Positions 45,689 through 48,600 of a stretch of 64,000 nucleotides of DNA are shown piece after piece; the stretch's first letter is position 1, and each line of letters begins with the position of its first letter. The position numbers and the translations under genes were made by a program. Below the pieces are notes generated by a model, which saw only the letters and a list, made by a program, of their open reading frames with translations, was not told the DNA's origin and made no database searches. Source of the stretch: Geosiphon pyriformis uo1 (taxonomy: Eukaryota; Fungi; Glomeromycota); NCBI GenBank assembly GCA_016748015.1, contig JAAOMT010000630.1, positions 124,001-188,000 on the forward strand, in the 5' to 3' direction.

Positions 45689-48600
45689 TTAAGCGAAAAC
45701 GTCGTCTCTATCTGCTTCAATTTCTTCTTCCATTGCACTGAAATTAAGGAAGTGTTGGGGCCTTTTGGATGAAGGGTAAAATACAGTTAATGAATTAGAA
45801 AAATCTCAGGTCTGCAGTATCAAAACTTAAAATTAGAAAATAAATAAAGATCAATTACCTGTGCAACTCATGATAAAACTCTTTAGGAATATCTAATTTT
45901 AATTTATAGGTCATATTAGGGCTATGTGATGGACCCATGAATGAATAATTCCAAACATCATTCTCGGGGACCATAAAGAAACCCATGAAACGATCTGACA
46001 AAAGCATCTGAACTTTCTCGGCAAAAGTTGGTAGATACCCTATATTTCAAAGTTGTTCAGATTAATTTCGGTTGATAGGTATAAATTATTGATTTTCAAT
46101 GGAAGTGGAAATGAGATATCACATACCTGGCGGAGTTGGCGTGTTGTCCTTGTTATTACGTGCCCATTCGAACCCTGATGGAGTCAATTTGTAAGCCGTT
46201 AGTGAACAGGACCCAGGAGTAAAACTGACAGTCATTGAAATGGTCTTATCAGCATCCCAATAAGATTTATTTTCGGCGATGATTCTGGCATGAAGAGATA
46301 ATATTGTTGGGGAAAGTTGTGCAGTCTCGAAGGGTTGTGTTACTAACAAACCAAGTGGCTCAAGGTCTTGGATGTGTTCATGATTGGGAAGAGCACTTGG
46401 TAATTGCACTGATTGATGGGTGCCATATTGAGGAACTATTACCAGTGCCCGAATTTCTTTGACTTGTGCATTGTCTTTTGGTGACACCCCGAAAAGGTAA
46501 GCCGCAATTTGTGTACGAAGATCGGCAATTTGAATGAACCTCTTGAGCACGTTCTTTGGTAGCACATATGTATAGCCAGTATCTCGAATATCATCTGCGT
46601 TTACATAGATGTGATTGGTACGTAGGTGCAAGTTTGTAGATGATATAGCTCTTACACGCCACTCTGTTTTTGACGAGAACGTCTGGGTCTCGTAATTACT
46701 TGTGGTTGTTACAATCATCTCATCACCATGGATATTTTGTGTTTTGGTGGTGACAGCGGTTAGCTGTGATTGCTCCTTTGTCTGTTTCTCGATCTCGGCA
46801 ATTTGTTGGCGTTGCAGTGACGGAGCAGATATTTCCATACCAAGAATAATATCGCGTATTTCTGATTGTGTTAAAGAAGCTACGTTTACATTGTTCTTTT
46901 TTCCATAGTCCGCAAGAATGAGATCTCGCAGAGCATTCTCAACTTTGATCCATTCCTCGTCATTTAATGTTGGCCAAATATGATGAGCTTCAGTGATTGT
47001 ATTTTTGTCAGGACGCAGAATCATCTTGGTCTTGTCAGTGTTTACATGCAAAGCTCGTAATATGAGGATTAGGCGTGAGAAAGCAGTGTACGAAGAAATA
47101 GTTTTGAGCCAATCATCGAAAAGGTTGAAAAGAGTCATCTGAGGTTCTGTTGCCTTTAGAATTAAATCTCCAAACTTTTCCAGCTTGAGACATGCTTGGA
47201 AAGGTAATTGCAATTCGCTGCCTTTGATAACTATGTTGGGGAAATCAAGTAAATGAACTTCCAAAGGATCTAACATTCCCTTTCTTGTTACAATAATTTG
47301 TTTTGGTTGTTCTTCAATTGGTAAAGACCTAATTAACGCGGCAACTTCTTCGGCTGTTTTCCATTTAGCCAATTGGCCGAGACGTTTTTGTCCGGCCCAA
47401 ACAGAAGTATGAATAATTTTCAGGAAGAGTTGTCCTGTGCGAGGATTGAAGATGAAGATGGCCCCGTTGATTGGTTTAGTCGTTAAATTGCCTTCAAAGG
47501 TCTTGTGAATCGTGACTCGATACACATTTGTGTCGTCAACGAACCAAATGATTTGATTTGAAAATAGCTCGGCATAGTTTTGTGATGATAAGTAAGGTTC
47601 AGTCGGTTCCGACGAATACAACTGAAGACCTTTACGAATACGTTCTCTTAATACATATAGAGCAGGATTTGCTTTCATAATTTTAGCCATTGCTGATTGC
47701 ATTAAAGGCTTCATTCCAGGAATCTAGAAATTTTGGATTTTTTTTGACGAATCTTAAGTTAAGATAAAGGATCGATACAAAAAAGGAGAAATGAAAGAAA
47801 AGAGACAAACCCAATGTCCGTAAGCCGAGTGCAAGTTGTAAGCCAAATCAATTCCAATCATGATACCAAACGGTGATGGATATATACTCATGTTGTCGGT
47901 TGTATAATCCAAGAACTTGGCTCTTGTATAACGTTCAATATCGTGAGAATCAAAATCTCCCCATCTCAATTGAACATCTACGAACCATCGTGAAGTTGTG
48001 GTACCATCCATCACATCCTTTGTATCGTTTAACAAGGAAGGTTTGGAAACGTTCCATTTGTATGCAGCGAACAATAAAATATCAGCACAAGATGAAGTCA
48101 TCTTGTAGGATTTTCTTGGATGAATGGTTTCTTTTTGCACCGTCTCTATCTGCAAACTTTCCAATTCAGAGTCGAATACTTGGCACTGGAGACAAAGGAT
48201 GTTTAAAAAAATGCGAACAAAAAGCACTTGAAAATGAAATCACCTAGAACTTACCACTTTTATGGCCAAAACAAAAATTTGAAAGTTGAAAAAAAAAGAA
48301 ACGTTAGGAAGATAAATCACAAAATGAGAACGCAAAGAAAAAAATTGGGATGACTAACGATCCATAACAGTGGATTCATGAATTTTTTGCCACAAATGAG
48401 CACGAAATATTTGAATCAAACTGATTTTAAGTGTCGGTATTTTGCCGTGCATAAAAATCCCTGTTAAATCTAGTTGTACTTGGAAACCAACATAGACATT
48501 AGCACGATTGATAGTAGGTGACCACCATAAAGTGAATCGACGATTAGGAATTTGGTTGAGACCAGAGCGTTGAGCATTCGTTAATTTCTTGTATTTCATT

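What the first reader, a model, noticed from the sequence alone, without database searches (positions are those of the whole stretch)
48186..48358. Predicted 2-nucleotide microexon (TG) in PRP8
The upstream exon ends ATG GAT C|GTTAGT (phase 1). The downstream exon begins CTCCAG|TGC CAA GTA (phase 0). A direct join would frameshift this essential gene. Inside the interval the minus strand reads CATAAAAG|TG|GTAAGT at 48256-48255: an AG and a consensus donor only 2 nt apart. It is preceded by a CCTAAC branch-like site (~48303-48308) and a long pyrimidine tract. Including TG gives GAT CTG TGC CAA = D-L-C-Q, the conserved PRP8 MDLCQVFD. Flanking introns would be 102 and 69 nt. The AAG acceptor has a precedent in the last intron of this gene. 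Exons this small imply ordered or recursive splicing. In the core spliceosome gene, skipping would cause a frameshift and could act as an autoregulatory sensor (inference).
Basis: partly seen in the sequence, partly recalled or inferred. Interest (0 to 1): 0.88.

Follow-up and report, generated by a model that had tools for sequence, protein, structure and literature searches.

The report
Two-base exon at an intein site
The core splicing gene PRP8 of the fungus Geosiphon pyriformis very probably contains an exon only two bases long, and its two introns sit exactly where a parasitic DNA-cutting element (an intein) invades this gene in related fungi, which suggests such elements drive the birth of new introns.

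Summary
The window is Geosiphon pyriformis PRP8. Of 28 in-frame splice solutions, only the 2-nt TG exon (48256-48255) restores the conserved D-L-C-Q-V helix, and it has the best splice-site score. The published annotation instead uses one 180-nt intron that deletes C-Q-V, a gap no homolog has. RNA confirmation is missing: the one available run did not reach the junction. Two-base exons are known (57 in Coprinopsis). Autoregulation has no support, and none of ten related genes shares these introns.

The new point is the position. Intron B lies exactly at the PRP8 intein site MDL/CQVF and intron A lies 2 nt upstream; the related fungus Entrophospora carries an endonuclease-type intein there. Across Mucoromycota PRP8, 9 of 59 intron positions lie within 3 nt of 13 intein sites (0.8 expected), and every exon of 35 nt or less is near one. 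An annelid control shows none. The exon is most likely a by-product of repeated intron gain at a homing target, a link reported before from single cases. The scan has noted two other 2-nt exons and an intein-abutting intron in this genome; I did not check them.

The parts
45689..53797 (-). PRP8 gene of Geosiphon pyriformis (G9A89_019535, KAG9288913.1); 11 exons in the corrected model, 2382 aa against 2379 annotated
48359..49174 (-). 816-nt upstream exon, ends ATG GAT C (human D1592 plus first base of L1593)
48257..48358 (-). Intron A, 102 nt, phase 1; weakest donor (4.2 bits) and weakest acceptor (AAG, -1.1 bits) of the gene's ten introns; 97-nt AG-free stretch; 2 nt upstream of the intein site
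48303..48308 (-). Branch-point-like CCTAAC of intron A (A at 48304), 47 nt before the acceptor and followed by a pyrimidine tract; no AG lies between it and 48258
   Evidence: motif match only, not mapped by experiment
48255..48256 (-). 2-nt exon TG, completing the Leu codon CTG
48186..48254 (-). Intron B, 69 nt, phase 0, strong donor GTAAGT (11.6 bits, 77th percentile); lies exactly at the intein insertion site MDL/CQVF; holds an in-frame stop if retained
47811..48185 (-). 375-nt downstream exon, starts TGC CAA GTA (human C1594)
48227..48228 (-). Alternative acceptor AG inside intron B; in frame, would insert 13 residues into the helix (rival)
48179..48180 (-). Alternative acceptor AG 7 nt inside the downstream exon, used by the public annotation; deletes C-Q-V (rival, possible minor isoform)
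51673..51686 (-). 14-nt exon of the same gene; its introns lie 17 and 3 nt from a second intein site (HL/CREIL)
49175..49267 (-). 93-nt intron 10 nt from a third intein site (FY/CPKE)
46040..46126 (-). 87-nt intron that an RNA contig shows spliced out; shows the gene is transcribed and spliced

Best explanation
What it is (about 0.92): a constitutive 2-nt exon in the PRP8 gene of Geosiphon pyriformis, needed to encode Leu in an indel-free helix. How it is spliced (inferred, about 0.6): by intron definition, one intron after the other, most likely B first. The strong donor of B overlaps the acceptor of A in space. Removing B also removes three competing acceptors (48244, 48227, 48186). Intron A is then finished from a distant branch point by scanning to the first AG. 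Why it exists (about 0.75 that it is linked to the intein site): both introns are private to this lineage among the genes mapped and were gained on the homing target of the PRP8 intein at MDL/CQVF. They arose either during repair of endonuclease cuts or by being kept because they break the recognition site. Two gains 2 nt apart left the tiny exon as a by-product, not as a regulatory device. Shown: the anatomy, the need for the two bases, the coincidence with the intein site and the gene-wide clustering. Inferred: use in mRNA, order of splicing, and cause of the clustering.
For: Only 1 of 28 in-frame solutions gives the full peptide; it has the best BLOSUM score (136.8, next 120.8) and best splice score (19.3; single-intron rivals 5.0, 4.1, 0.3). 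A blind spliced alignment with the intronless Diversispora protein recovers it. Intronless Gigaspora reads GAT CTG TGT CAA, the same Leu codon. No indel in this segment in 26 PRP8s down to 48% identity or in 80 metagenome loci apart from inteins. The segment lies inside predicted helix 27-47, pLDDT above 90. Intron A has the second-longest AG-free zone and third-highest pyrimidine content of 62 AM-fungal introns. A branch point 44 nt upstream is also reported for the 1-nt exon of Arabidopsis APC11 (PMC4674806). Inteins insert at this exact junction in 9 fetched proteins, with Hint and Hom_end domains in Entrophospora and Dispira. Introns lie at -1 (Jimgerdemannia), -6 and +6 (Rhizophagus), -5 and +6 (Funneliformis) of the same site. 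Gene-wide: 9, 12 and 20 of 59 positions lie within 3, 6 and 20 nt of 13 intein sites, against 0.8, 1.4 and 4.5 expected; this holds without this site and against residue-matched pseudo-sites, p 0.004-0.017. Capitella has 0 of 21 within 30 nt.
Against: No RNA read or contig covers the junction. No independent DNA assembly was found. The AAG acceptor scores below all 66 training introns. Introns of 139 and 160 nt occur in this window, so one long intron is not impossible. Three of 14 conserved cysteines with no known intein also have an intron within 3 nt, more than chance. Positions 1 nt apart in different lineages may be one slid intron, which would inflate the counts. The introns show no similarity to intein DNA or to each other. 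Jimgerdemannia and Funneliformis keep inteins 12-25 nt from introns at other sites, so a nearby intron does not always exclude an intein.
Confidence: 0.75

Rival explanations
1. The exon is real, but its place on the intein site is incidental. Introns and inteins share a preference for some other feature (Cys or TG codons, chromatin, conserved core), or an old intron near this codon slid and one ordinary gain followed.
For: 3 of 14 non-intein conserved Cys sites have an intron within 3 nt. Jimgerdemannia has an intron at 4883, between the two Geosiphon positions, and 1-nt offsets occur between lineages. First-reader notes report 2-nt exons in Ras and GAPDH of this genome (unchecked), genes with no intein known to me.
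Against: The enrichment survives residue-matched pseudo-sites and removal of this site. It recurs at non-Cys sites (LF/S +3, KA/S -2), appears in Jimgerdemannia, which was fetched after the idea was written down, and is absent in Capitella.
Confidence: 0.15
2. One reading: the exon is an autoregulatory sensor, skipped to give a frameshift when spliceosome activity changes.
For: Skipping gives a stop five codons later, and retention of either intron also gives an early stop. Feedback exons are common in splicing-factor genes (own knowledge).
Against: Neither intron position is shared with any of ten other genes, whereas such exons are usually conserved. The intein link explains the position without regulation. 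No expression data.
Confidence: 0.07
3. One 180-nt intron (48358-48179), as in the public annotation, giving a PRP8 that lacks C-Q-V.
For: It is in frame and is the deposited model KAG9288913.1. After intron B is removed this AG lies 9 nt behind the true one and could be a minor product.
Against: Worst acceptor score of the region (-3.9). The seven supposedly intronic bases encode the conserved C-Q-V. It is the only gapped row of 27, inside a helix.
Confidence: 0.03
4. One 132-nt intron to the acceptor at 48227, inserting 13 residues.
For: In frame with no stop; splice score 4.1.
Against: It puts 13 residues into an indel-free helix, bypasses the first AG after the branch point, and leaves a strong donor and a complete 69-nt intron unexplained.
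Confidence: 0.02
5. Assembly error: two bases were lost at an exon end (for example TG-TG collapsed), and the interval is one 173-nt intron.
For: The only DNA available is one assembly; no independent copy was found.
Against: The interval would then hold the needed AG-TN-strong donor by chance (0 of 20,000 shuffles). 173 nt is longer than all 62 AM-fungal introns measured (61-160 nt). An RNA contig matches another 1.25 kb of the gene with no indel.
Confidence: 0.03

Closest known systems
1-3 nt internal exons: Arabidopsis APC11 single-nucleotide exon (PMC4674806); 57 two-nt exons in 50 Coprinopsis cinerea genes (PMC12230235)
   Same: AG-exon-GT, frame-essential, missed by standard annotation; distant branch point (44 nt in APC11, 47 nt here); sequential intron removal proposed.
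   Different: Those are shown by cDNA or long reads, this one is not yet. No link to a mobile-element target is mentioned in the passages I read. Here the host is a core spliceosome gene of a glomeromycete.
Bathycoccus PRP8 site-d polymorphic intron (Monier et al. 2013, PMC3749507)
   Same: Same insertion site: 87 residues after site a, which is MDL/CQVF on my reference (residue 1541 to 1628). An intron stands at the codon where other alleles have a full intein.
   Different: One intron in one alga, polymorphic. Here two introns 2 nt apart create an exon, and the pattern recurs at several sites in several fungal lineages. PMC10710043 calls VMDL/CQVF site b in its text, so the letter differs between papers.
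Introns near intein sites in Anaeramoeba paralogs, and Eupenicillium prp8 as cited there (PMC10710043)
   Same: Proposal that intron gain blocks homing by breaking the endonuclease recognition site.
   Different: Described case by case. I found no gene-wide statistical test and no mention of resulting microexons in the passages read.
Stwintrons of ascomycetes (own knowledge)
   Same: Two short U2 introns almost abutting, removed in sequence.
   Different: In a stwintron the inner intron splits a splice signal of the outer one and no base is kept. Here two coding bases are kept.

Membership tests
Ultra-short constitutive internal exon (1-3 nt) | Bounded by an AG acceptor and a GT donor | tested here: met
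   donor 77th percentile, acceptor weak
Ultra-short constitutive internal exon (1-3 nt) | Both flanking introns of normal size with their own signals | tested here: met
   102 and 69 nt within a 61-160 nt range; branch-like site and pyrimidine tracts
Ultra-short constitutive internal exon (1-3 nt) | Needed for the conserved reading frame | tested here: met
Ultra-short constitutive internal exon (1-3 nt) | Present in mature mRNA | tested here: inconclusive
   the only run offered covers 46000-47337, not the junction
Spliceosomal intron at an intein homing site | Intron at or within a few bases of an allelic intein insertion point | tested here: met
   0 and -2 nt
Spliceosomal intron at an intein homing site | Relatives carry an endonuclease-type intein at that point | tested here: met
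   Entrophospora (Hom_end E 5e-4, just under the Pfam cut-off) and Dispira (above it); nuclease activity not shown
Spliceosomal intron at an intein homing site | The intron-bearing allele lacks the intein | tested here: met
   no insertion in Geosiphon PRP8
Spliceosomal intron at an intein homing site | Intron arises from, or blocks, endonuclease cleavage | not testable with these tools
   needs a cleavage assay or population data; no intein-derived sequence is detectable in the introns
Stwintron | Inner intron interrupts a splice signal of an outer intron; no base retained | tested here: not met
   two bases must be retained
Zero-nucleotide recursive splice site | AG directly followed by GT, used with no exon left | tested here: not met
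   solutions that use the AG-GT at 48244/48243 do not give the conserved peptide
U12-type intron | Donor RTATCCT | tested here: not met
   donors are GTTAGT and GTAAGT
Autoregulatory NMD-coupled exon of a splicing factor | Position conserved across related species | tested here: not met
   absent in ten other genes
Autoregulatory NMD-coupled exon of a splicing factor | Inclusion changes with the level of the factor | not testable with these tools
   no reads

The most novel reading that the evidence does not exclude
Intein homing endonucleases are a recurring, gene-wide source of new spliceosomal introns in PRP8 of mycorrhizal fungi and their relatives. Each lineage has gained its own introns on the same few targets, and repeated hits on one target have carved exons of 2, 5, 11-12, 14 and 18 nt. 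Intron positions then record past intein invasions and can predict unknown intein sites.
Probability: 0.5. Interest if true: 0.8.

Novelty: new variant of a known kind. Interest (0 to 1): 0.6.

Why it matters
How new spliceosomal introns arise is an open question, and break repair is a leading but poorly anchored idea. PRP8 in these fungi offers known cut sites, living relatives that still carry the endonuclease, and many lineage-private introns on those sites. That allows mutation (gain at the cut) to be told apart from selection (immunity anywhere in the recognition site). The exon also shows that a spliceosome can keep two bases faithfully in its own essential gene. It corrects the deposited protein model, and it warns that glomeromycete annotations drop such exons (the Funneliformis and Gigaspora models do).

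Tried and rejected
RNA test: one run was offered. Its contig confirms the intron at 46126-46040 but stops at 47337, and the reads tool was then spent. Exact look-up of nine window ORFs found no independent contig. The metagenome scan gave 80 PRP8 loci, none recognisably glomeromycete. Prunus as a plant control was not on record. No Paraglomus or Archaeospora gene was found. RNA structure over the two introns is no better than shuffled (z 0.66). No Rfam match in the window. Introns A and B resemble neither each other, intein DNA nor a repeat in the window. One search used the wrong residue range (another intein of the same protein); one search has the right one. Literature searches for microexon with stwintron, or with fungi and 2-nt, found nothing. 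In the metagenome loci the clustering is seen only at 7 nt, a width chosen after looking (6 of 42, 1.2 expected); at 3 and 20 nt it is not significant. I took no contig for human; human PRP8 appears only as residue numbering from the PDB output.

Full report
Identity. The exons carry the PRP8 Pfam domains. A locus fetched through the annotated protein KAG9288913.1 is 100% identical to window 35689-63797 over 28,109 nt. The window is therefore Geosiphon pyriformis assembly GCA_016748015.1, contig JAAOMT010000630.1. It is the same assembly and gives no independent check of the bases.

Observation. Every stated feature is in the sequence: exon end at 48359, intron A 48358-48257 (102 nt), TG at 48256-48255, intron B 48254-48186 (69 nt), next exon from 48185, CCTAAC at 48308-48303, and an AAG acceptor in the last intron. 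Searched separately against the PDB, the upstream exon ends at human D1592 and the downstream exon begins at C1594. One residue is missing, and C plus TG supplies it.

Is the exon needed? I enumerated all one- and two-intron solutions in the region; 28 are in frame without a stop. Only the 2-nt exon gives the full conserved peptide, and it has the best summed splice score under a matrix from 66 AM-fungal introns. A spliced aligner given only the intronless Diversispora protein finds the same exon. Gigaspora, intronless here, has the codons GAT CTG TGT CAA. The segment has no indel in 26 PRP8 proteins down to 48% identity; the deposited Geosiphon model, which uses one 180-nt intron and loses C-Q-V, is the only gapped row. 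The residues sit in the middle of a 21-residue predicted helix. A hidden AG-TN with a donor of at least median strength did not arise in 20,000 shuffles of the interval. Against this, the AAG acceptor is weaker than all training introns, and no RNA covers the site: the one run available shows the 46126-46040 intron spliced out but ends at 47337. I put the exon at about 0.92.

How it is probably spliced (inference). Intron A has the weakest donor and acceptor of the gene's ten introns, and intron B has a strong donor. Intron A has a branch-like site 47 nt before its AG, a 97-nt AG-free zone (second longest of 62) and a pyrimidine fraction of 0.74 (third highest). The Arabidopsis 1-nt exon has its putative branch point 44 nt upstream; its authors favour intron definition with sequential removal and cite a 9-nt potato exon whose second intron goes first (PMC4674806). 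U1 pairing at donor B would cover the AG of intron A (established U1 footprint, own knowledge). Removing B first frees that AG and deletes three competing acceptors. Skipping or retaining either intron gives an early stop. That fits a sensor but equally any frame-essential exon.

Not conserved, but on a special site. Neither intron position occurs in ten other genes: Rhizophagus, Funneliformis, Gigaspora, Diversispora, two Ambispora, Entrophospora, Jimgerdemannia, Calcarisporiella and Capitella. Ambispora and Diversispora PRP8 have almost no introns at all, so their absence says little. Mapping large insertions in the fetched proteins gave 13 intein sites (11 recovered again by a motif test). 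One is the L/C junction where intron B lies. Nine proteins have an intein there, including the AM fungus Entrophospora, with Hint and homing-endonuclease domains. It is 87 residues after site a, so it is the site where Bathycoccus alleles carry either an intein or a young intron (PMC3749507). Around it, relatives have their own introns: Jimgerdemannia -1, Rhizophagus -6 and +6, Funneliformis -5 and +6. An unnamed eukaryote appears to have one at 0 (P0129).

Gene-wide test. Of 59 distinct Mucoromycota intron positions, 9, 12 and 20 lie within 3, 6 and 20 nt of an intein site, against 0.8, 1.4 and 4.5 expected (circular-shift p 0.00014, 0.00014, 0.003). The excess remains without Geosiphon and without this site. 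Jimgerdemannia, fetched after I had written the idea down, has 4 of 18 within 3 nt; Capitella has 0 of 21 within 30 nt. With pseudo-sites matched for Cys/Ser/Thr, p is 0.004-0.017. Nineteen of the 20 near-site positions are private to one lineage, against 29 of 39 elsewhere. Every exon of 35 nt or less in the five intron-rich fungal genes aligned has an end within 27 nt of an intein site, including a 5-nt exon in Gigaspora and the 14-nt exon of this gene. Caveats: few species; Entrophospora positions come from its annotation; positions 1 nt apart may be one slid intron; 3 of 14 conserved cysteines without a known intein also have a close intron; and the metagenome set shows the effect only at a width chosen afterwards.

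Comparison with the literature. Two-base exons are known in fungi: 57 in 50 Coprinopsis genes from long reads (PMC12230235). Introns at intein sites, and the idea that they block homing, are reported for Bathycoccus, Anaeramoeba and Eupenicillium (PMC3749507; PMC10710043). I did not find a gene-wide test, glomeromycete cases, or microexons as the outcome in the library searched; subscription papers are not covered. It is not a stwintron, a zero-nucleotide ratchet point or a U12 intron.

Earlier scan notes. Unchecked notes report 2-nt exons in Ras and GAPDH of this genome, and inteins in three other genes, one with an intron abutting it. I looked up the intein notes after forming the intein reading; they agree with it but are not counted as support.

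Method note.

Verdict. A very probable real 2-nt exon, of a known kind, whose origin points to intron gain at intein homing targets. Novelty: new variant of a known kind. Interest 0.6.

Noticed in passing
window 51673-51686 (-): 14-nt exon of PRP8 next to the HL/CREIL intein site; the 160-nt intron before it is the longest of the 62 AM-fungal introns measured, and no AG inside it is directly followed by GT.
   Followed up: yes
L082 5208-5212 (Gigaspora margarita PRP8): 5-nt exon 13-18 nt from the FY/CPKE intein site, missed by the deposited model.
   Followed up: partly
L081 6941-7158 and L085 8019-8267: Rhizophagus and Funneliformis have runs of 19, 21/22 and 12/11 nt exons at the same site; one intron differs by 1 nt between them (possible intron slide). 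Funneliformis models skip two of these exons.
   Followed up: partly
L083, L087, L086: Ambispora PRP8 keeps only the first intron and Diversispora none, while the neighbouring RPN8 and prenyltransferase genes in Ambispora appear to share their introns with Geosiphon: gene-specific intron loss, perhaps by retro-processing.
   Followed up: partly
P0471, P0404, P0405, P0007, P0378: PRP8 inteins at 13 sites among the fetched proteins, more than the 7 listed in PMC6805012; Entrophospora and Dispira carry several each, and some Glomeromycota inteins contain spliceosomal introns.
   Followed up: partly
L009: Metagenome PRP8 with only three introns in 4.9 kb of coding sequence, all within 7 nt of intein sites.
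   Followed up: partly
L001, L065, L069, L071, L073, L079: Metagenome PRP8 loci with inteins at TH/S, DL/C or VH/C.
   Followed up: partly
reference nt 2418, 2970, 3672 (conserved Cys of PRP8): Conserved cysteines with close introns but no intein found; candidates for unsampled intein sites, or a sign of a codon bias.
   Followed up: partly
window 54473-54547 (+): GC-AG intron (75 nt) in the RPN8/PSMD7 gene that lies head to head with PRP8.
   Followed up: yes
window 53797-63797: Order PRP8, RPN8, prenyltransferase alpha is shared with Ambispora, but a VPS4-like AAA gene lies between the last two only in Geosiphon, and the prenyltransferase gene has the opposite orientation.
   Followed up: no
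window 17800-24600, 29002-41600: Retrotransposon-like reading-frame fragments, and a repeat of about 4 kb at 75% identity (29002-32938 against about 37650-41580).
   Followed up: no
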